IMG/VR virus record: IMGVR_UViG_3300037087_000760
Coordinates: 146,984 to 210,983 of that record
Direction: 5' to 3' (one strand)
DNA: 64,000 bases
This document shows, in pieces, positions 3,907 through 23,274 of the stretch. Below the pieces are notes generated by a model. The model was given only the letters and a program-made list of their open reading frames with translations, searched no databases and had not been told where the DNA came from. Each line of letters starts with the position of its first letter. Positions within the stretch are counted from its first letter, which is position 1. The translations under genes and the position numbers were made by a program.

Positions 3907-4861
3907 AGGAAATAAGAAAATTATGAAGATAAGAATTCAAGTGATTGAAAATAGTAATGAGTCACTATCAATATCCTATACTTTACAGAAACTAACCTTA
4001 GTTGGTTGGGTTAATTTACAATTATCTGATGTCTGGAAAGAAAAACTTCCCTATTTAGATGGAATTTCACCCATCCGATTCTTCGGAAAGGCCGGGAGTA
4101 GTTGTACTGATTCAGAAAAAGCTAAAACAGTCAAGACTTTTTTGAATAAATCCAAATATCTTGATGATTCTATGTACGAACTAATTTTTGGTTATAAACC
4201 TATACATAAGAAAGTTAGTTATCTCTATTAAGATGAAAAAAGAACCAATTCTTATTACAGAAGATGGTGTACCATACTATGATGAAAATAAGTTGGTCTG
4301 GGATACACATGATTTTTCCTCTGGTGATCCTGCTATAATAGTTAATCCTACATTTTTAGATCAAACACCTGTAAAATATGCTAAAAATATTGATCGAATG
4401 TTTTTTCATAGTAAGAAAAAAGCATTGGAATATATGAAAGATAACATAAGATTTTTAGCTTTGACTGACATTGATAAACTATCAAATGGTATTAATGAAG
4501 GAAATATAATTATCAATAGAAAAGATTTAATAAAATTACTCAGAAAAAGAATAAACGATGAAAACTGTTAGTATACCAGCTAATGTTCATTTACCCAAGG
4601 TCGAAGTCGAAATCGATCCACTTGATGTCTTAAAAGAATTAGAGGAAGAATTTTTAGATAAATATGGATGGATTGAAAAAAAAGGAAAGAAATATTTTTT
4701 AATGTATCCAGAACTCAGCTTTGATGAAAAGAGTTATCAAGTACGTCAAGTATCTACGAATGAAGTGAAATTTATTGATGCTATTCATACGATGCAAACT
4801 TTTTTACAAGAAAAAAATAAGAAATCAAAATCAAAACCAAAATCTTAACAAAAAACTCACA

Positions 4862-6907
4862 ATGAAAAAACTCGCAATTATTTTTATGTCATTACTATTT
4901 GTAGTAATGGTTGGTTATTCTCAGAAATTCAATCCTGATTCGGGATACAGATTAACAAAGGATACCTTACAATTAAATGAGGTTACTATCAGTTCCTTTC
5001 TTCCATACCAAGCAACAACCTTGATGCCAATCACTTTTAAGAATTTATATAAAGCTGATTTGGGATTGAAAAATTATGGTCAAGAACCAAGTAGGATTTT
5101 AAATACCACTCCATCTATAACCACTTATTCGGAATCAGGTGGTGATTGGGGTTATTCTTATATAAGATTAAGAGGTATTGATCAAACCAGAATAAACACC
5201 ACTCTTAATGGTGTTCCAATGAATGAACCAGAGGATCAAGGATGTTATTTCTCAAATTATCCTGATTTTCTTCAGTCTGTTGATATGTTACAAATACAGA
5301 GAGGAACAGGAATGACTAAAAATGGGTCAGCCAGTTATGTTGGAAGTATGAATTTCGAATCATATAAACCATCTACATCAAGTGTAGGGGCCTTTTTCGG
5401 AGCTGGATCATTCGGATCAACCAAAATTTCAATGAATACTGAACAAAATTGGAAAAAAGGTGGGTTATATGCTTCATTTTCTGACCTTGAAACAAAAGGT
5501 TATAAATATCATTCTGGTAATCATTCCAGAAGTGCTTTTCTTGTGGGAAATTATACAACTGGAAGAAATCAATTTAAATTTGTTGGTTTTGCTGGTGAAC
5601 AAATGAACCAATTAGCTTGGTTGGGTGTTCCAATAGATAGTATCAATTTAGACCGTAGATATAACACTTGTACCACTCGTGAAAATGATCATTTTAATCA
5701 ATATCATTTGCAATTTCATCACACCTATATTATAGATAATAAATCCAGATTTAATTATTGTGTCTATTATAATTATTTGAATGGTTTCTATACTTATGAT
5801 GGAATTCATAATGGAACATGGGATACTATATCATCTGGTAAATATAATTTATATGCATATCATCTTTATTCTAACTTCTTAGGTACTAATGTAAACTATT
5901 ATATTAAACTTGGACCATTGGATTTTTATACAGGGGTTAATGGTTCTAAGTATGATAGGGAACATCATGGAACAACAAATGATATCTATACTTACAAAAA
6001 TACAGGATTCAGAGATGATTTAAGTGGATTTGTTAAAGGTATTTTAAACGCTGGAAGTTTCAATTTTTATGGTGATGTTCAATATCGTTATACTACTTTT
6101 GTTTATAATGGTGATGTTTATCTACAACATTTTATTTGGAATTTTCTGAATTATAGTGTTGGTGTTGAATATAAAGCCAAACACAACATCCTTTATTATT
6201 CCATTGGTAAAACACATCGAGAACCTATTCGTAATGATATGTTTGGTGGTTATGATAATCTATCGTCTGATCCTCTTGGAAAAGCTGTTTTTTATGATTT
6301 AAAACCAGAATCAGTATTGGATCAGGAATTTGGCTATCGTTATATCATAGGAAATTTAAATTTGAACATCAATCTATATTATATGTTATTCAAAGATGAA
6401 TTAGTATTAACGGGAGCTTACGGGCCAACAGGATTACCACTTCATGAAAATGTAGATAACAGTTTCAGGTCAGGATTTGAATTCGATTTTAAATACAGAT
6501 GGAAATTTGGATTAACATTACTTCAAAATGTATCCTATAATTATAGTAAAATAACATGGACAAATAAACAAACAACTCCTGTCTTAACACCAGAATGGCT
6601 ATCAAATACTGAAGTAAATTATAATTACAAATGGTTTATAATCGGTTTGAGTGGTAGGTATCAAAGTTGGTCTTATATTGATCAAAGAAACAACTTCACC
6701 ATTCCAAGTTTTTATACACTGAATGCTATGATTGGATTAAAATGGTCATGGGGAGAATGGGATATTTATTTGAATAACATAACTGATCAAAAAACTTTAT
6801 CGAGTGGTATGGTTTCTGGTGATGGGACTCCTTATAATCAATTTATTCCTCTGTATTATGTGAATGCACCATTTAATTTCTTTACTGGACTTAAATTTAA
6901 AATGTAA
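4862..6907 (+). CDS. TonB-dependent outer-membrane receptor (resembles vitamin/thiamine-type TBDRs of Bacteroidota)
   Basis: Signal peptide MKKLAIIFMSLL, plug motif IRLRGIDQTRINTTLNGVPMN..QIQRG, LKPES, C-terminal GLKFKM beta strand; start taken at 4862. Confidence 0.9.
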   Translation: MKKLAIIFMSLLFVVMVGYSQKFNPDSGYRLTKDTLQLNEVTISSFLPYQATTLMPITFKNLYKADLGLKNYGQEPSRILNTTPSITTYSESGGDWGYSYIRLRGIDQTRINTTLNGVPMNEPEDQGCYFSNYPDFLQSVDMLQIQRGTGMTKNGSASYVGSMNFESYKPSTSSVGAFFGAGSFGSTKISMNTEQNWKKGGLYASFSDLETKGYKYHSGNHSRSAFLVGNYTTGRNQFKFVGFAGEQMNQLAWLGVPIDSINLDRRYNTCTTRENDHFNQYHLQFHHTYIIDNKSRFNYCVYYNYLNGFYTYDGIHNGTWDTISSGKYNLYAYHLYSNFLGTNVNYYIKLGPLDFYTGVNGSKYDREHHGTTNDIYTYKNTGFRDDLSGFVKGILNAGSFNFYGDVQYRYTTFVYNGDVYLQHFIWNFLNYSVGVEYKAKHNILYYSIGKTHREPIRNDMFGGYDNLSSDPLGKAVFYDLKPESVLDQEFGYRYIIGNLNLNINLYYMLFKDELVLTGAYGPTGLPLHENVDNSFRSGFEFDFKYRWKFGLTLLQNVSYNYSKITWTNKQTTPVLTPEWLSNTEVNYNYKWFIIGLSGRYQSWSYIDQRNNFTIPSFYTLNAMIGLKWSWGEWDIYLNNITDQKTLSSGMVSGDGTPYNQFIPLYYVNAPFNFFTGLKFKM

Positions 6908-7509: not shown

Positions 7510-7510
7510 C

Positions 7511-7621
7511 AATCTCTGACATGGCACCCACTCTAAGGGACCAATACGAAAAGTTTGGGAGCTATCTGGAACAAGGCCGGAAGGCAGAAGGGATGGTAGT
7601 GGGGAGCCTAAATCAGAGATT
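7511..7621 (+). ncRNA. About 110-nt structured RNA with SRP-helix-8-like apical hairpin
   Basis: Terminal stem AATCTCTGA/TCAGAGATT, CCCACT/AGTGGG, apex CAAG-GCC-GGAA-GGC-AGAA. Confidence 0.5.
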
Positions 7622-7789
7622 TTTTAAATATTTTTATCAAATAATTTTTTTTATTCAGAAATTTGACATAATTTTGTAGTCCCTTGTTTGATAAAGAGTG
7701 TGAGTCAAAGGAAACAATAAAGATTTTTAAGTCTTGAGTTCCGGCTGTAAAGGTAGCATACTCTTGTTCTTTGATTTAATGATGAAAAA

Positions 7790-7998
7790 GTTAGTTCTCG
7801 AAGATTAACGGCACCAGAAAGGTGTACGACACTCGTTGAGAGTGTACGATACTAAGAGGTGTATCAGAATCTTTGAAACGGGTATAAACCCGTTTGGGGA
7901 GGCGAGCAGCCGAACCAAATACAAACTCATATAACTCCGGCCCGCAAGTCGGATGAAAATTGAGTATTCAGTTTTGCGGAACTGTTGGGATAGCTAAC
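7790..7998 (+). ncRNA. About 210-nt multi-branched structured RNA, unknown family
   Basis: Closing stem GTTAGTTCTCGA/TTGGGATAGCTAAC enclosing at least 7 hairpins; GC-rich and non-coding in an AT-rich genome. Confidence 0.65.
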
Positions 7999-8008
7999 AT
8001 AAATTTAT

Positions 8009-8088
8009 TTGTTGTGGTGATAAGTCCAAATCGATATGATTTAGTTCAGGAAGTATCGGACTAATTTGGTGAAAAACAAACACAACAA
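8009..8088 (+). ncRNA. About 80-nt structured RNA
   Basis: TTGTTGTG/CACAACAA closing stem, AGTCC/GGACT inner stem. Confidence 0.5.
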
Positions 8089-8091
8089 CAC

Positions 8092-8155
8092 GGACAGGTA
8101 GCTTAAGAGAGAGCCGTATCAACGAGACGGTGGTTTAAACCCACCTCTGTCCACA
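8092..8155 (+). ncRNA. Mini tRNA-like RNA lacking a normal anticodon arm
   Basis: GGACAGG/TCTGTCC-A acceptor, GCTT/GAGC D stem, GGTGG-TTTAAAC-CCACC T arm. Confidence 0.6.
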
Positions 8156-8326
8156 ATATAAAGGGTGCAAAACTTGTTTTAACAATGTTTTTCGGGACGG
8201 TTTAGTTAAATCGGTTATTCTTAACCAGCCCTTCTTAGAAAATTAGAAGAATCTGATACCCGATGGTGTATAGGATACCCGAAGTACAAGGGATGATCGG
8301 TGGCAACACAATCAACTTCTTTTAAC

Positions 8327-8458
8327 GAGTGTATTAGTGTAACGAAAGCACAGGCTGTTTGATGTTAGAGTAAGTTTTAGACGGCGGTCTTGGTCATTAG
8401 ATTGACAAAACTGAAATATCGTAGGTCGGATGAGGGTTCAAATCCCTCATACATTCCA
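8327..8458 (+). ncRNA. tRNA-like RNA with an 80-nt domain in place of the anticodon arm
   Basis: (G)AGTGTAT/ATACATT(C) acceptor, GTGT/GCAC D arm, GAGGG-TTCAAAT-CCCTC T arm. Confidence 0.65.
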
Positions 8459-8557
8459 AAAGGTGATGTGATGGAATAGTTTTTTCCATCCTGTTTTAAG
8501 GAGAGAACATTTGAGGATAAAGCGAGCCTACATCACAAACAGGATCACCAAATAAGG

Positions 8558-8640
8558 TGAGGGAAACAAAGTAGAGTACCTTTTCTTCGGATTGAGGCCT
8601 TCGGGCCGAGGGAAATGACCTGTTCTCCCTCAACTTTTTT
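8558..8640 (+). ncRNA. Structured RNA with UUCG hairpin, followed by U-tract (end of ncRNA array)
   Basis: TGAGGGA/TCCCTCA closing stem, GGCC-TTCG-GGCC, then T run. Confidence 0.5.
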
Positions 8641-8682
8641 AAAAAACGAAATTAAATTAAACTTTTTGAAAAAAAAGTTCTA

Positions 8683-8720
8683 AAATAGAAAAAAGAGACT
8701 TTATAAGTTAAATATATAAT
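8683..8720 (+). promoter_or_regulatory. Extended promoter of the Ile/Asn/Met/Gln tRNA operon
   Basis: AAATAGAAAAAAGAGACT-N10-AATATATAAT, near-identical to the - strand element at 23441-23478. Confidence 0.75.
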
Positions 8721-8731
8721 AAAAAAACATA

Positions 8732-8802
8732 TCCAGTAGGAACGTAAGTTCCGTTTTGGGACGCTCAGCGACCCAGAGGGGAAAACTCCCCGCAACTGGA
8801 TA
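8732..8802 (+). ncRNA. Four-way junction RNA in the leader
   Basis: TATCCAGT/ACTGGATA closing three hairpins (GGAAC-GTAA-GTTCC; TGGG..CCCA; GGGG..CCCC). Confidence 0.65.
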
Positions 8803-8813
8803 AACTTTTTGAA

Positions 8814-8984
8814 ATGATTATGACACAGAACATCCAAAATATGATTATTAATCAGATACCCGGTAAAAATACCGATTGGATGAACTTTGTCTATAACGAA
8901 TATAGAAAAAACCCAATCGGAAACGATTGGGTTTTTTTGTTTTATATGTCCACCATAGTTTTTAACTGGTGTTCTTTGAAATAA
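8814..8984 (+). CDS. Putative attenuator leader peptide MIMTQNIQNMIINQIPG... (56 aa, not in ORF track)
   Basis: 14 of first 15 codons are Met/Ile/Gln/Asn, using ATG, ATT, ATC, ATA, CAA, CAG, AAC, AAT; overlaps attenuator segments. Confidence 0.75.
   Translation: MIMTQNIQNMIINQIPGKNTDWMNFVYNEYRKNPIGNDWVFLFYMSTIVFNWCSLK
8906..8938 (+). terminator. Intrinsic terminator of attenuator (3:4 hairpin)
   Basis: CCCAATCG-GAAA-CGATTGGG-TTTTTTT; 5' arm also complementary to CCGATTGG at 8872-8879. Confidence 0.9.
8971..8981 (+). promoter_or_regulatory. boxA-like antitermination element GTTCTTTGAAA (also + 7766, 9431; - 22921-22931, 23252-23267)
   Basis: Resembles rrn boxA; copies noticed at entries to RNA-gene arrays. 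Confidence 0.6.
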
Positions 8985-9061
8985 TGATAAATCATATTCG
9001 GATTATAAGTTCAAAACTGATAATCTGAACATAAAATGTAAATAAAAATAAATTAGAAACT

Positions 9062-9439
9062 ATGGAAGATTTAAAAAAATTAGCGGATGATCTGAGTAAT
9101 CTCACCGTATTAGAGTGTTACCAGTTAGCTAAGATAATGAAAGAAGAATACGGAATAGAATCAAATACAAAAATTGTTGGTGTGAATGTATCACCAGTTC
9201 CAACTAAGGTAGTTGAAATTGAAAAAACAAGTTTTGATGTGATTCTAAAATCAGCAGGAACAACCAACAAACTTGGTGTTATCAAATCCATCAAAGAAAT
9301 GACAGGACAAAGTTTATTGGAAATTAAGAATCTCGTTGATAATGCACCAGCGAAACTAAAAGAAAATGTAAGTAAAGATGAAGCTATGTCTTTACTGAAT
9401 ATTCTGAAAGAATTAGGTGCAGAAATTGAAGTTCTTTGA
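9062..9439 (+). CDS. rplL: Ribosomal protein bL12 (L7/L12)
   Basis: NLTVLE..LAKIMKEEYGI, EKTSFDVIL, KLGVIK, ELGAEIEV. Confidence 0.95.
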   Translation: MEDLKKLADDLSNLTVLECYQLAKIMKEEYGIESNTKIVGVNVSPVPTKVVEIEKTSFDVILKSAGTTNKLGVIKSIKEMTGQSLLEIKNLVDNAPAKLKENVSKDEAMSLLNILKELGAEIEVL

Positions 9440-9450
9440 AAATAATAAAA

Positions 9451-9580
9451 AATGTAGTAGCGAGTTTGAGTGTTACTTCGTAGCTCAACAGTCGAGCATC
9501 AATCAGTTAAATTGAAAGTTGTGGGTGCGATTCCCACCGAACCCGAAAGGGTAATATCACTCAATGATTATCTCTACATT
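9451..9580 (+). ncRNA. tRNA-Asn(GTT) mimic embedded in a long terminal stem (Y-RNA-like)
   Basis: D arm, TCAAT-CAGTTAA-ATTGA anticodon arm and T arm on a 4-bp TTCG/CGAA stem continuing into TTGAGTG/CACTCAA and ATGTAG/CTACAT; no free acceptor end. Confidence 0.7.
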
Positions 9581-9588
9581 TTTTTAAT

Positions 9589-9676: not shown

Positions 9677-9758
9677 TGTGTCGTACGCAGCCGATCCTGA
9701 TAAGATCGAGAACTTGTAACTGGTGTTGAAAATGTGGGTTCGAATCCCACCGGCACAA
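9677..9758 (+). tRNA. Atypical D-armless tRNA-Ile(GAT)-like
   Basis: TGTGTCG/CGGCACA, CGATC-CTGATAA-GATCG, normal T arm, 8-nt D replacement, 25-nt variable region. Confidence 0.7.
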
Positions 9759-9767
9759 CAAAAATTT

Positions 9768-9839
9768 GGGTTGGTAGTACTAATGAAAAACGGCGGCCTG
9801 TTAAGCCGCGAGATGTGGGTTCAAGTCCCACCCGGCCCT
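9768..9839 (+). tRNA. tRNA-Asn(GTT), weak D arm
   Basis: GCGGC-CTGTTAA-GCCGC, intact acceptor and T arms. Confidence 0.8.
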
Positions 9840-9848
9840 CAATATTAT

Positions 9849-9922
9849 TCCTCAGTAGCTCAGCTGGTTAGAGCATTTGACTGTTAATCAAAGGGTCACA
9901 GGTCCAAATCCTGTCTGGGGAG
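9849..9922 (+). tRNA. tRNA-Asn(GTT)
   Basis: Canonical cloverleaf TCCTCAG...CTGGGGA-G. Confidence 0.93.
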
Positions 9923-9928
9923 CAAAAT

Positions 9929-10004
9929 TCGGAATGTTTGTCTGTGATTGGGTGCACCACACAGATAATAAAGGAAAAATGTGGTTCAATTCCACCATTC
10001 CGAG
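9929..10004 (+). ncRNA. tRNA-like RNA (acceptor + T arm + one hairpin), no clear anticodon
   Basis: TCGGAATG/CATTCCGA-G, TGTCTGTG/CACAGATA, GTGG-TTCAATT-CCAC. Confidence 0.55.
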
Positions 10005-10012
10005 CAAAAATA

Positions 10013-10112: not shown

Positions 10113-10192
10113 TGTGGTGTATCCCCCATGTCTTATAAACATGCATTAAAAGGGTAATAGCGTGTATGTGGGTTCGAGTCCCACCACCACAA
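10113..10192 (+). tRNA. Atypical D-armless tRNA-Ile(TAT)-like
   Basis: TGTGGTG/CACCACA, CATGT-CTTATAA-ACATG, same architecture as 9677-9758. Confidence 0.7.
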
Positions 10193-11854: not shown

Positions 11855-12847
11855 TCAGGTGGTAATTGGTTGTTTATTACTATATTCATTTTTTAAAATA
11901 TTCATCATATCTATATGATTATGAACAGTTTTTATCTGATAAATATGGTCTAATCCGTATTCCTTTATTATATTATCTATTCTTTCCTTTTCCATTCCAT
12001 GCGAACTATAATCACTTACTCTTCTTCCACCTTCTTCTTTAAAATATAAAATACTTCCCTTTGGGATCTTGAATGATTTATCATTAACAGCCCATTCTCC
12101 CTCAGTTTCGAATGTTACACTATTTATTTCAAAGGCTTTTGAAAAAAGTTTCCTCAGTTCAGGAAATTCTAATTTGTCTTTTATGTAATCTTCAATTGGT
12201 TTCCAATTTTTCCAAGGATAATCCTTTGTCATTGGATAATCAACAACATATTCTTTTAGCATTTCCAAAATTATCTTGACAAAATCATCAAGATTATTTA
12301 TATGTAATTGACCTAAATGATAAAGATCATCTATTTTTTCCGACAAAGTATAATGAATATCCTGAATATAATTAATTATACCGTTTTTATCATGATAAGT
12401 ATCAAATTTAAGTCCACCATCTCTTTTTTTCTTAATATTTCTATAAGCTAAATTTTGAAACAATTTATCTAATGCCCCAGTGAAGGTTATATCTCTTTTA
12501 CGGCCATTTTTATATTCGATAAATTGTGGATCATTCATTACTAATCTTCTCCAGTACTTAAAATTTTGTTTACAAAAGAAATCTGGATTGAAGTATTCTA
12601 TGGGTTCTAAGTTTTTATTCAATTTCAAGACTTCAGAACCATTCATTATGACAAGCAACTCTCTGATGTCAAACCAGTGTTTTGCTATCCCATAATGGTC
12701 TGAAATTCCCTTTAAATTCAAAAATTCCATCCTCATTAAAGAATCCCACACTTTATCATCTCCAACTCTTAAAACTAAATAGAACCAATTAGGTTCATTC
12801 TTGGGAATCCATTTCTTTTCGAATATTTGAAAATCAGTAATCATCAA
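11855..12847 (-). CDS. Hypothetical protein with N-terminal capsid-targeting-like tag
   Basis: MITDFQIFE start; ExE-like ETEGEW near C-terminus. Confidence 0.55.
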   Translation of the reverse strand: MMITDFQIFEKKWIPKNEPNWFYLVLRVGDDKVWDSLMRMEFLNLKGISDHYGIAKHWFDIRELLVIMNGSEVLKLNKNLEPIEYFNPDFFCKQNFKYWRRLVMNDPQFIEYKNGRKRDITFTGALDKLFQNLAYRNIKKKRDGGLKFDTYHDKNGIINYIQDIHYTLSEKIDDLYHLGQLHINNLDDFVKIILEMLKEYVVDYPMTKDYPWKNWKPIEDYIKDKLEFPELRKLFSKAFEINSVTFETEGEWAVNDKSFKIPKGSILYFKEEGGRRVSDYSSHGMEKERIDNIIKEYGLDHIYQIKTVHNHIDMMNILKNEYSNKQPITT

Positions 12848-12872
12848 TGTATATATTATTTTTTATGGGCAC

Positions 12873-12896
12873 AAAAAAACCGTGAATTCACGGTTT
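12873..12896 (-). terminator. Intrinsic terminator
   Basis: AAACCGTG-AATT-CACGGTTT with U-tract on - strand. Confidence 0.75.
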
Positions 12897-13543
12897 AATG
12901 TTATATTATATTAGAAGTTAAAAGTTAATACCAGTATAATCAATAAGATCTTTCATATGTTCATTCTTATGTCCTTCGGCGTGTTCCATAGCTTCAAAGA
13001 TATCTGTCTTACTTCTTTCAGTTTTGAATCCATTTGTAATTATATCAACATATTTAGGATCTGTCCAACTTTTAAATCCAGTTCCATTGATTGCATATGG
13101 GTTGAATCCCCAATGAGCTTTACACTCAACACCATCTTCAATTGTTGGTTGAAAAAAATCCAAAGATCCATAATTTCCAACAAAAAATCTTTTCTTTGTT
13201 AGTTTATCTTCAAACATCAATCTATATACATTCTTTAAGTCTATCCAATAATATCCGTAGCAAATTCTATATCCGTATTTTTGGGTTTCGCTGAATTTAT
13301 TTGGATTGAATGAAACATTTATCTTTTTTGGATTTTTTGCTTCTATTACTTTATAGTAATTGTCGAATGTAATTCCAATCTCATGAAATTGACCATCTAT
13401 TAATCCTGCATAAGATCTCCAACCCAGACCAAAAGCACAATCATACCAATCCCATTCACGGGCAGGGATATTCTCTTTATAAAGTGGTTGAACGACTAAC
13501 TTTCCTTTACGGATAGTCAGTCTTTCAATCGGATTTATTGTTT

Positions 13544-22918: not shown

Positions 22919-22935
22919 AATTTCAAAGAACTCAG

Positions 22936-23007: not shown

Positions 23008-23012
23008 GTTTG

Positions 23013-23085
23013 TGGAAGTACAAGGATTCGAACCTCGAATACACGGTGTTACAAGCCGCTGAGCGACCATCCGCTCACTACTTCC
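23013..23085 (-). tRNA. tRNA-Tyr(GTA), short variable loop (atypical)
   Basis: 73 nt, loop TTGTAAC. Confidence 0.8.
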
Positions 23086-23086
23086 T

Positions 23087-23242
23087 TGGTGGGGGTGGAT
23101 GGAATTTCACACATCGGATGATAAGTTTACAGCTTACGAAGTAACTGTTTTACATCACTACAATTGATTGGCCTTCGATAAAGGAAACAGTCCAATTCAG
23201 AATCCTTATCAATCGAGATACTTTGGTACAGTAATCACCCCC
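23087..23242 (-). ncRNA. tRNA-Tyr(GTA) mimic with D arm replaced by a 100-nt stem
   Basis: GGGGGTG/CACCCCC-A-CCA, TAAG-CTGTAAA-CTTA; shares TGTAGT..GTTACTTCG and TATCTC with 9451-9580. Confidence 0.7.
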
Positions 23243-23274
23243 TTTTATTTTCAATATGTTTAAGAACATGCAAC

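What the first reader, a model, noticed from the sequence alone, without database searches (positions are those of the whole stretch)
9451..9580. Y-RNA-like tRNA-Asn mimic opens the + tRNA array
Seen: intact D, anticodon (GTT) and T arms sit on a 4-bp stem that continues into a long imperfect 5'/3' helix with TGTAGT..GTTACTTCG and TATCTC motifs, so it has no aminoacylatable end. Known: bacterial Y RNAs join a Ro60-binding stem to a tRNA-like domain. Inference: a decoy or scaffold displaying an anticodon that matches the operon.
Basis: partly seen in the sequence, partly recalled or inferred. Interest (0 to 1): 0.68.

Follow-up and report, generated by a model that had tools for sequence, protein, structure and literature searches.

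The report
Phage Ro60-partner RNA with tRNA cloverleaf
A huge peat-soil phage encodes a small RNA in which a complete but unchargeable tRNA cloverleaf sits on the stem typical of the RNAs encoded beside phage Ro60 genes, so it is most likely a new form of "Y RNA" that links the phage's Ro60 protein to tRNA biology.

Summary
Window 9450-9584 (+) folds into a D arm, an anticodon arm (loop CAGUUAA), a T arm and a 4-bp acceptor remnant. These sit on a long imperfect 5'/3' helix, with an extra GAAA-capped hairpin. ARAGORN does not call it a tRNA. Rfam tRNA matches only model positions 4-67. Thirteen distinct homologs show compensatory changes in all six helices.

The Y-RNA reading is largely supported, although the element is not Rfam YrlA. 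The same 211-kb virus record encodes a Ro60 ortholog 56 kb upstream. The element's stem words (AGCGR, nine bases, GUUACUUCR, then AUCUC and a one-base bulge) define an RNA family. That family lies on the Ro60 strand next to the gene in 74 of 80 viral loci (136 of 136 hits). In Bacillus phage G all 7 hits surround the Ro60 gene. A related 735-kb phage without Ro60 has none. A model trained only on Ro60-adjacent hairpins aligns the element end to end.

It differs from YrlA in three ways. The cloverleaf is in natural tRNA order with an intact anticodon arm. It lies far from Ro60, at the head of a tRNA array. Its anticodon varies between homologs (GUU, GAU, UGU), so "matches the operon" fails. Ro60 binding and expression are untested.

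The parts
9431..9441 (+). Promoter-like word GTTCTTTGAAA, overlapping the stop codon of the L7/L12-like gene, 9 nt before the RNA
   Evidence: One search finds 4 copies in the window. One search finds the same word, often followed by ATTGA-like bases, before other Y-like RNAs (G000 98598, 13193-) and before tRNA array heads. A promoter function is inferred, not shown.
9450..9584 (+). Whole RNA element: Y-like stem plus tRNA cloverleaf plus U run
   Evidence: R1 scores 158.7 bits. R2, trained on Ro60-adjacent hairpins only, scores 16.9 bits, E 2.8e-4, over 9450-9581. Covariation is shown.
9450..9472 (+). 5' strand of the long helix, carrying GUAGCGAG (9457-9464) with bulged U9458 and internal-loop bases C9461/G9462
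   Evidence: G9457-C9574, A9459-U9573 and G9460-C9572 are invariant. The word aligns to the GAAGCGG of Ro60-adjacent RNAs at the same distance from GUUACUUCR.
9472..9480 (+). Family word GUUACUUCG. Its last four bases form the 5' strand of the 4-bp acceptor remnant
   Evidence: It is invariant in all 13 cloverleaf homologs and 5 stem-only homologs. It is shared with RNAs upstream of Ro60 genes in phage G, L048, L050 and others.
9483..9497 (+). D arm (stem GCUC/GAGC, loop AACAGUC with a single G)
   Evidence: Rfam tRNA alignment. Pair 37:46 switches UA to CG in 5 sequences.
9499..9515 (+). Anticodon arm. The loop is 9504-9510, CAGUUAA, with A rather than U at position 33 and GUU at 9506-9508
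   Evidence: Loop positions 33-35 are among the most variable columns of the alignment, together with the junction after the extra hairpin, while 32, 36, 37 and 38 are fixed. Stem pair 55:63 switches AU to UA.
9521..9537 (+). T arm (stem GUGGG/CCCAC, loop UGCGAUU with G at position 55)
   Evidence: L037 alone has T loop UUCAAUU together with D loop AAUGGUU, which may be an 18:55 tertiary covariation.
9538..9541 (+). 3' strand (CGAA) of the 4-bp acceptor remnant. No discriminator base or CCA follows
   Evidence: All four pairs are kept in all 13 sequences.
9542..9551 (+). Extra hairpin CCC-GAAA-GGG at the place of the 3' end of a tRNA
   Evidence: One pair changes on both sides, CG to UA, in L028.
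9558..9581 (+). 3' strand of the long helix, with the family word AUCUC (9570-9574) followed by the terminal stem
   Evidence: Pairs 7:129 and 19:116 change on both sides. The Ro60-adjacent RNAs carry (A/U)U(C/A)UC at the same place.
9579..9586 (+). U run after the helix, a possible intrinsic termination or 3'-end signal
   Evidence: A run of 4-7 T is kept in the homologs. The function is inferred.

Best explanation
The element is a non-coding RNA of the Y RNA kind, the partner RNA of the phage's own Ro60 (TROVE) protein. Its long 5'/3' helix carries the docking module: a helix with a one-base bulge (G-U-A-G opposite C-U-C), the purine-rich word AGCGAG in an internal loop, and the word GUUACUUCG at the top. 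The same module is found in the small RNAs encoded directly beside Ro60 genes of this phage clade. In place of the simple apical loop of those hairpins, this RNA carries a full tRNA cloverleaf in natural order. The cloverleaf cannot be charged: it has a 4-bp acceptor, no CCA, and a hairpin in that place. By analogy with YrlA and with the Ro60/Y RNA/PNPase machines of Deinococcus and Thermus phage phiLo, the stem would hold Ro60. The tRNA-shaped module would then bring in, or compete for, a protein that recognises tRNA shape and anticodon loops, such as a modification enzyme, a repair enzyme or a nuclease. Shown here: the structure, its conservation, homology of the stem with Ro60-adjacent RNAs, and presence of a Ro60 ortholog. 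Inferred: transcription from the upstream GTTCTTTGAA word, Ro60 binding, and the identity of the tRNA-side partner.
For: (1) Ro60 ortholog in the same record. The ORF is G000 99198-100817, 539 aa, with Pfam TROVE at 30.7 bits and phrog_850 at 2e-34. Its AlphaFold model (pTM 0.80) has Ro60 structures as its top 13 PDB matches: phiLo, Xenopus, human and Deinococcus Rsr.
(2) The stem words define a Ro60-linked family. The pattern AGYGR-N8-11-YTACTTC gives 41 hits upstream on the Ro60 strand, 3 just downstream and 0 on the other strand in 80 viral Ro60 loci. Covariance model R2 gives 136 hits, all on the Ro60 strand, in 74 of 80 loci. In the whole 497-kb phage G genome R2 gives 7 hits, all within 405.2-412.8 kb around gp540. 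In the Ro60-less 735-kb relative LR756503.1 it gives none.
(3) R2 was trained without this element. It still aligns window 9450-9581 end to end across the 90-nt cloverleaf insert, at 16.9 bits and E 2.8e-4. Stem-only relatives of the same stem score 21-32 bits.
(4) Phage G's weak YrlA match (36.2 bits) lies 2.1 kb upstream of its Ro60 gene. It carries the same words: AGCGG, nine bases, GUUACUUCG, then AAUCUC.
(5) G000 has two plain hairpin members right upstream of Ro60 (98616-98684 and 98724-98874) and no YrlA-type RNA there. Chen 2014 found one tRNA-like Y RNA plus one or more hairpin Y RNAs per species, so this element may fill the tRNA-like role.
(6) Covariation is seen in all six helices.
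Against: No binding or expression data exist. Only DNA runs from peat hold the sequence. The element lies 56 kb from the Ro60 gene, whereas described Y RNAs lie within about 4 kb. Its version of the motif (GUAGCGAG) departs from the Ro60-adjacent consensus GAAGCGG. The R2 score is modest and was obtained only with filters off on a short stretch. With default filters the window search missed it. Two close Ro60 relatives (L048, L049) show no cloverleaf version within 10 kb. The 5' strand of the metagenome homologs was fixed by the search pattern, so its invariance there is partly ascertainment. Copies of the module sit at the heads of tRNA arrays, which could point to a role in tRNA operon transcription or processing instead.
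Confidence: 0.68

Rival explanations
1. It is an anticodon-nuclease decoy that works without Ro60. In this reading, an unchargeable tRNA look-alike soaks up host tRNA-cleaving defence enzymes and so protects the phage's tRNAs.
For: The record carries 67 ARAGORN tRNAs with many duplicated isoacceptors, the pattern expected of a phage under tRNA-targeting pressure. Anticodon-loop positions 33-35 are among the most variable columns of an otherwise 91%-identical alignment (GUU, GAU, UGU), while 32, 36, 37 and 38 are fixed. The elbow seems to be kept.
Against: This does not explain why the stem is the same conserved, bulged module that accompanies Ro60 genes. It also does not explain why stem-only versions without any tRNA part are conserved. 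Position 33 is A or G in all GUU forms, which breaks the U-turn that known anticodon nucleases see in their substrates (established knowledge, not tested here). This reading is compatible with the best explanation if Ro60 is the platform.
Confidence: 0.12
2. It is a leader or processing element of the tRNA operon. The long helix would be a cleavage stalk (RNase III-like) or a terminator/anti-terminator after the L7/L12 gene, and the cloverleaf a decayed tRNA gene trapped inside it.
For: The element sits 5 nt before the first tRNA of the array and right after a gene. A U run follows the helix. Module copies lie at the heads of several arrays in G000.
Against: A decayed tRNA would not keep compensatory changes in the D, anticodon and T stems across 13 lineages. 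The helix words are tied to Ro60 genes rather than to tRNA arrays: in L071, L059 and similar loci the arrays lie 3 kb downstream of Ro60 and have no module, while the RNAs sit just upstream of Ro60. The terminal helix is A/U-rich and was not picked up by the terminator scan.
Confidence: 0.1
3. It is a working tRNA (Asn in this phage) with an odd precursor that is trimmed and given CCA.
For: Rfam tRNA scores above its gathering value (39.9 against 29). M. smegmatis YrlA is cut by RNase P and receives CCA.
Against: Only 4 acceptor pairs can form, and the next three positions are mismatched. There is no discriminator base or CCA. A conserved hairpin occupies the 3' end. The loop has A33 or G33, the T loop has G55, and the D loop has no GG. 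The anticodon identity changes among close relatives while the body stays the same. ARAGORN rejects it. No CCA-adding enzyme was found in the record (in a fragment).
Confidence: 0.03

Closest known systems
YrlA (Rfam RF02553; Chen et al. 2014, PMC4201824)
   Same: It is a partner RNA of bacterial and phage Ro60. A 5'/3' stem with a purine-rich motif near the 5' end is joined to a domain with D- and T-arm features that mimics tRNA. Each species usually has one tRNA-like RNA and one or more hairpin Y RNAs.
   Different: YrlA runs V, T arm, closed acceptor stem-loop, D arm, and has no anticodon arm. Here the order is D, anticodon arm, T, and the acceptor is open and leads into the stem. The motif is AGCGAG rather than GNCGAA(N)G. 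The Rfam model does not match even at E 10. The RNA lies 56 kb from Ro60 rather than within 4 kb.
Deinococcus radiodurans Yrn1
   Same: It binds Ro60 (Rsr). Its T arm and a possible 5-bp 'anticodon arm' are in the same orientation relative to the 5' end as here. It tethers Rsr to PNPase.
   Different: Yrn1 has no full D arm, a 6-nt loop and no variable arm. No sequence similarity was tested or seen here.
Thermus phage phiLo Yrl1/Yrl2 with phiRo60 (PMC12135203; PDB 9KOP, 9L5Y)
   Same: A phage-encoded Ro60 binds phage-encoded stem-bulge-stem RNAs that lie just upstream of its gene. It forms a complex with host PNPase. phiRo60 is the best structural match of the G000 protein.
   Different: The phiLo RNAs are plain hairpins with a CGAA bulge and have no tRNA domain. 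Protein identity is only about 20%.
Bacillus phage G gp540 locus
   Same: Its Ro60 is 49% identical to the G000 protein. Seven RNAs of the same stem family surround it, and one of them carries a tRNA-like domain.
   Different: The phage G tRNA-like domain is of the permuted YrlA type and sits next to Ro60. The G000 version is a natural-order cloverleaf placed at a tRNA array.
Other tRNA mimics (tmRNA tRNA-like domain, tymovirus TLS, mascRNA)
   Same: They have L-shaped tRNA-like folds used for something other than decoding.
   Different: Those keep a chargeable or processed acceptor end and lack a true anticodon arm. Rfam matches here were far below threshold (Tymo_tRNA-like 19.7 against 40).

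Membership tests
YrlA (Rfam RF02553) | Match to the family covariance model at or above 69 bits | tested here: not met
   There is no YrlA match on 9450-9584 even at E <= 10. The only YrlA hit in the region (25.8 bits) spans two ordinary tRNAs at 9787-9908.
YrlA (Rfam RF02553) | Motif GNCGAA(N0-1)G near the 5' end | tested here: inconclusive
   The element has AGCGAGU at 9459-9465, sharing GCGA-U with the Rfam consensus GGCGAAUG. Homologs have AGUGAU, so the CGAA core is not kept.
YrlA (Rfam RF02553) | Permuted order: T arm, closed acceptor stem-loop, D arm | tested here: not met
   The order here is D arm, anticodon arm, T arm, against the description and the model consensus.
YrlA (Rfam RF02553) | Encoded within about 4 kb of Ro60 on the same strand | tested here: not met
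   Same strand, but 55.6 kb downstream of the Ro60 ORF.
Y RNA in the broad sense (Ro60 partner RNA) | A Ro60 ortholog is present in the genome | tested here: met
Y RNA in the broad sense (Ro60 partner RNA) | 5'/3' stem with a conserved bulged helix | tested here: met
   The bulged U9458 and flanking pairs are invariant, and the terminal stem covaries in the cloverleaf set and strongly in the hairpin set, where 5 of 7 pairs change on both sides.
Y RNA in the broad sense (Ro60 partner RNA) | Physical binding to, and stabilisation by, Ro60 | not testable with these tools
   No RNA-protein assay or complex prediction for RNA was available, and no RNA runs hold the sequence.
   The element has AGCGA, nine bases, GUUACUUCG, then AUCUC.
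   16.9 bits, E 2.8e-4, in a 501-nt search with filters off. This is weak, and it was missed with default filters.
   Two other copies are there (G000 98616-98684 and 98724-98874). This one is distal.
Canonical tRNA | 7-bp acceptor stem with a free 3' end, U33, G18G19, and T-loop U54-U55-C56 | tested here: not met
   The acceptor has 4 bp, a hairpin replaces the 3' end, position 33 is A, the D loop has a single G, and the T loop has G55.

The most novel reading that the evidence does not exclude
The phage may run a set of Ro60-docked tRNA look-alikes, placed at the heads of its tRNA arrays. Their fast-changing anticodon loops would act as bait. Host tRNA-cleaving defence enzymes, or damaged tRNAs, would be captured on the Ro60 ring and handed to an exonuclease such as host PNPase. 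That would be a counter-defence or tRNA-surveillance device not described before.
Probability: 0.12. Interest if true: 0.85.

Novelty: new variant of a known kind. Interest (0 to 1): 0.62.

Why it matters
Ro60 and Y RNAs are conserved from bacteria to humans, yet what the tRNA-like part of bacterial Y RNAs binds is still unknown. This element shows that the Ro60-docking stem can carry a complete natural-order cloverleaf, with an anticodon loop that changes between close relatives. The same stem carries a permuted YrlA-type domain in phage G. The tRNA mimic has therefore been attached to the docking stem at least twice, in different ways, which argues that tRNA shape itself is the selected feature. 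The work also defines a stem family that accompanies a very large clade of phage Ro60 genes (more than 3,800 proteins at E <= 1e-20). No Rfam family reached its gathering score over these RNAs in the 19 Ro60 loci scanned. Bacillus phage G is cultivable and carries seven members, so it offers a direct experimental system.

Tried and rejected
- Rfam YrlA and every other Rfam family on the element: only tRNA matched.
- blastn against 50,697 phage records: no relative of the element.
- Two exact or over-strict DNA patterns in IMG/VR found nothing. The second was my error: a K where homologs have A.
- RtcB and CCA-adding enzyme in the 211-kb record: none. The record is a fragment, so this says little.
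- Ro60 in the 50-kb fragment that holds homolog L002: none. This is uninformative at 11% completeness.
- Four metagenome records could not be searched for Ro60 because they are not held.
- Close Ro60 relatives L048 and L049 have no cloverleaf version within 10 kb.
- Sequencing runs: only peat DNA assemblies, no RNA. Laying contigs gave no useful variation.
- Supplementary tables of Chen 2014 are not held, so I could not check whether the phage G RNA is already listed there.
- The window's minus-strand copy at 23111-23160 has the 5' words but scores only 9.2 bits with R2, so I do not count it.
- Complex prediction was not used because it does not take RNA.

Full report
SETTING. The window is bases 146,984-210,983 of a 210,983-bp IMG/VR virus record, estimated 71% complete. 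ARAGORN finds 67 tRNA genes in the record, grouped in arrays with many duplicated isoacceptors. The gene just upstream of the finding (9062-9439) encodes a ribosomal protein L7/L12 homolog. An identical protein occurs on contigs up to 736,551 bp. A 64%-identical one sits on the 735,411-bp uncultured phage LR756503.1. The nearest cellular homologs, at about 55% identity, are from Bacteroidota. The sequence is held by peat metagenome assemblies only. This is therefore a huge phage from peat, probably infecting Bacteroidota.

THE OBSERVATION.
- A 4-bp stem UUCG/CGAA closes a D arm, an anticodon arm with a 7-nt loop CAGUUAA, a 5-nt variable region and a T arm.
- Beyond the 4 pairs the strands do not pair as an acceptor stem.
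- On the 3' side a CCC-GAAA-GGG hairpin follows.
- The 5' and 3' flanks then form a long imperfect helix that ends in a U run.
- Rfam's tRNA model matches positions 4-67 of 71 at 39.9 bits, and ARAGORN does not call it.
- The single-sequence fold has z = -2.63.

HOMOLOGS AND STRUCTURE. I followed relatives of the L7/L12 protein to their contigs and ran one pattern scan of metagenome contigs. This gave 13 distinct copies of the cloverleaf form. Wherever the upstream flank was held (the contigs reached through the L7/L12 protein), the copy lies right after the L7/L12 gene; wherever the downstream sequence was read, a tRNA-Ile(GAU) follows. All 13 score 135-163 bits with covariance model R1.
- On the model alignment, 95% of cells pair.
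- Six pairs change on both sides: two in the long helix and one each in the D, anticodon, T and extra-hairpin stems.
- None of 500 column shuffles reaches the observed count of double-change pairs, double-change cells, paired fraction or covariation score; the count of further pair types is not above shuffles. Partners slid by 1-3 columns give 0-2 such pairs.
- The sequences are close (91% mean identity), and the 5' strand of the metagenome copies was fixed by my search pattern. The support is therefore real but modest.
- One lineage (L037) has D loop AAUGGUU with T loop UUCAAUU. All others have AAYAGUY with UGCRAUU. That is what a switch of the tertiary 18:55 contact from G:U to A:G would look like. 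This is a single event and is only suggestive.

NOT A WORKING tRNA.
- The acceptor has four pairs and no free 3' end.
- Position 33 is A or G in every GUU form.
- The T loop has G55, and the D loop lacks the GG pair.
- The anticodon differs among near-identical bodies: GUU in 6, GAU in 5 and UGU in 2. Positions 32, 36, 37 and 38 are invariant.
The next gene is tRNA-Ile(GAU) wherever the downstream sequence was read.

THE LINK TO Ro60. The record encodes a 539-aa TROVE protein at G000 99198-100817. Its AlphaFold model (pLDDT 77.5, pTM 0.80) shows a helical-repeat ring followed by a von Willebrand A domain. Its 13 best PDB matches are all Ro60 proteins. The protein is 49% identical to gp540 of Bacillus phage G. 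It belongs to a very large, well-conserved clade in viral contigs.

Rfam YrlA does not match the finding. In phage G, however, a weak YrlA match (36.2 bits) lies 2.1 kb upstream of gp540. Its flanks carry AGCGG, nine bases, GUUACUUCG on the 5' side and AAUCUC on the 3' side. The finding carries the same words at the same spacing: AGCGA, nine bases, GUUACUUCG, then AUCUC.

I then found a 77-nt paralog in the same record (G000 89679-89755). It has nearly the same stem as the finding but only a small loop where the cloverleaf would be. Four more such stem-only relatives turned up in metagenomes. The stem is therefore a module in its own right.

TESTING THE LINK.
- (a) In 80 IMG/VR loci centred on Ro60 homologs, the strict word pattern occurs 41 times upstream on the Ro60 strand, 3 times just downstream and never on the other strand.
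- (b) The RNAs around these hits share one anatomy. It consists of a terminal stem that covaries strongly, a G-N-A-G/C-U-C helix with a one-base bulge, AGCGG in an internal loop, a 9-bp helix, UUACUUCR opening the apical part, and (A/U)UUCUC on the way back. Short forms are 69-87 nt and long forms 150-235 nt.
- (c) Model R2 was built only from short Ro60-adjacent hairpins. It finds 136 matches in those 80 loci, every one on the Ro60 strand, in 74 loci. Three of the six blank loci have no upstream DNA.
- (d) Over whole genomes, R2 finds 7 matches in phage G, all between 405.19 and 412.84 kb around gp540 at 407.4 kb. It finds none in the 735-kb relative LR756503.1, which also lacks Ro60 by both Pfam and protein search.
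- (e) With filters off, R2 aligns the finding from 9450 to 9581, bridging the cloverleaf as an insertion, at 16.9 bits and E 2.8e-4. The stem-only relatives score 21-32 bits.
- (f) No Rfam family reaches its gathering score on the Ro60-adjacent RNAs.

INTERPRETATION. The published practice is to call stem-bulge-stem RNAs encoded just upstream of Ro60 Y RNAs or Y-like RNAs. For Thermus phage phiLo such RNAs do bind the phage Ro60 and form a complex with host PNPase. By that standard the R2 family is the Y RNA family of this phage Ro60 clade, and the finding is a distal member whose apical domain is a cloverleaf.

G000 has two plain members right upstream of Ro60 (98616-98684, 98724-98874) and no YrlA-type RNA there. 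Chen et al. found one tRNA-like and at least one hairpin Y RNA in each species studied. The finding may be the tRNA-like member here.

I put the probability that it is a Ro60 partner RNA at about two in three. What the cloverleaf recruits is open. The fixed C32, U36, A37 and A38 together with the changing 33-35 suggest an interaction with something that reads anticodon loops.

RIVALS. A Ro60-independent nuclease decoy, a leader or processing stalk of the tRNA operon, and a real tRNA are discussed in their own sections. The first is compatible with the main reading. The second is weakened because the stem words follow Ro60 genes rather than tRNA arrays in other phages. The third is contradicted by the anatomy.

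LIMITS. No transcript or binding data exist. The R2 match to the finding is weak. The distal location is unlike described Y RNAs. E-values from the session's models are rough. Co-occurrence of the cloverleaf form with Ro60 on one molecule is shown for G000 only, because the other contigs are short.

Noticed in passing
G000:C1:89679-89755 (+), outside the window: A 77-nt paralog with almost the same 5'/3' stem as the finding but a small loop instead of the cloverleaf. Four similar stem-only RNAs occur in metagenome loci L025, L030, L032 and L036.
   Followed up: yes
G000:C1:98616-98684 and 98724-98874 (+), outside the window: Two Y-like RNAs of the R2 family lie directly upstream of the Ro60 ORF (99198-100817). 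They are preceded by tRNA-Met and by the word CGTTCTTAAA.
   Followed up: yes
G000:C1:88998-89065 (+), about 89620-89700 (+) and about 12830-12920 (-): These RNAs begin with the same 5' words (AGCGG or GUGGCGA, spacer, GUUACUUCG). They continue into an anticodon-type arm and a canonical T arm without a D arm. ARAGORN calls the first a 68-nt tRNA-Arg(tct). This is a second way of fusing the module to tRNA parts.
   Followed up: partly
window 9677-9761, 9927-10007 and 10113-10192 (+): Three tRNA-like genes between the called tRNAs. Each has a 7-bp acceptor stem and a good T arm but no normal D arm. Two have Ile-type loops (GAU, UAU) and a hairpin in the variable region. The first is conserved in L006, L007, L008 and L011. 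ARAGORN misses all three, and Rfam scores the third at 35.3 bits.
   Followed up: partly
window 7510-9060 (+): This 1.5-kb stretch has no long ORF and is full of G+C-rich hairpins. It includes a 129-nt Rfam tRNA match (8328-8456, 30.5 bits) with a large insertion, and a strong terminator-like hairpin at 8905-8938.
   Followed up: no
window 9431-9441, 8971-8981, 22921-22930 (-) and 23259-23267 (-); also G000 13193 (-), 73331 (-), 88908, 89166 and 98598: The word GTTCTTWRA, often followed after about 3 nt by ATTGA, lies 10-25 nt before Y-like RNAs and tRNA array heads. The same word precedes Ro60-adjacent RNAs in other phages (L071, L072, L100). It may be a promoter for small-RNA genes. The bare word is only mildly enriched (31 found against 17.6 expected).
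   Followed up: partly
window 23111-23160 (-): GUAGUGA, a spacer and GUUACUUCG occur upstream of the minus-strand Tyr/Leu tRNA array, but R2 scores only 9.2 bits. This is a doubtful, possibly decayed copy of the module. An uncalled tRNA-like sequence follows at about 23010-23085 (-).
   Followed up: partly
window 4775-6907 (+): A 710-aa ORF with TonB-dependent receptor plug and beta-barrel domains, an unusual cargo for a phage. IMG/VR classes the record as 'provirus'.
   Followed up: no
L004:3440-3600 (LR756503.1, same position after the L7/L12 gene): The Ro60-less 735-kb relative has a different structured RNA at the syntenic place. It has a terminal stem AAGAUAAGU/ACUUAUCUU and a G+C-rich interior, again followed by tRNA-Ile(GAU). 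Neither R1 nor R2 matches it.
   Followed up: no
L038 (Bacillus phage G, NC_023719.1 405191-407292 and 412773-412841): Seven tandem or nearby members of the stem family surround the Ro60 gene gp540. They lie in gaps annotated as non-coding, and one carries the permuted YrlA-type tRNA-like core.
   Followed up: yes
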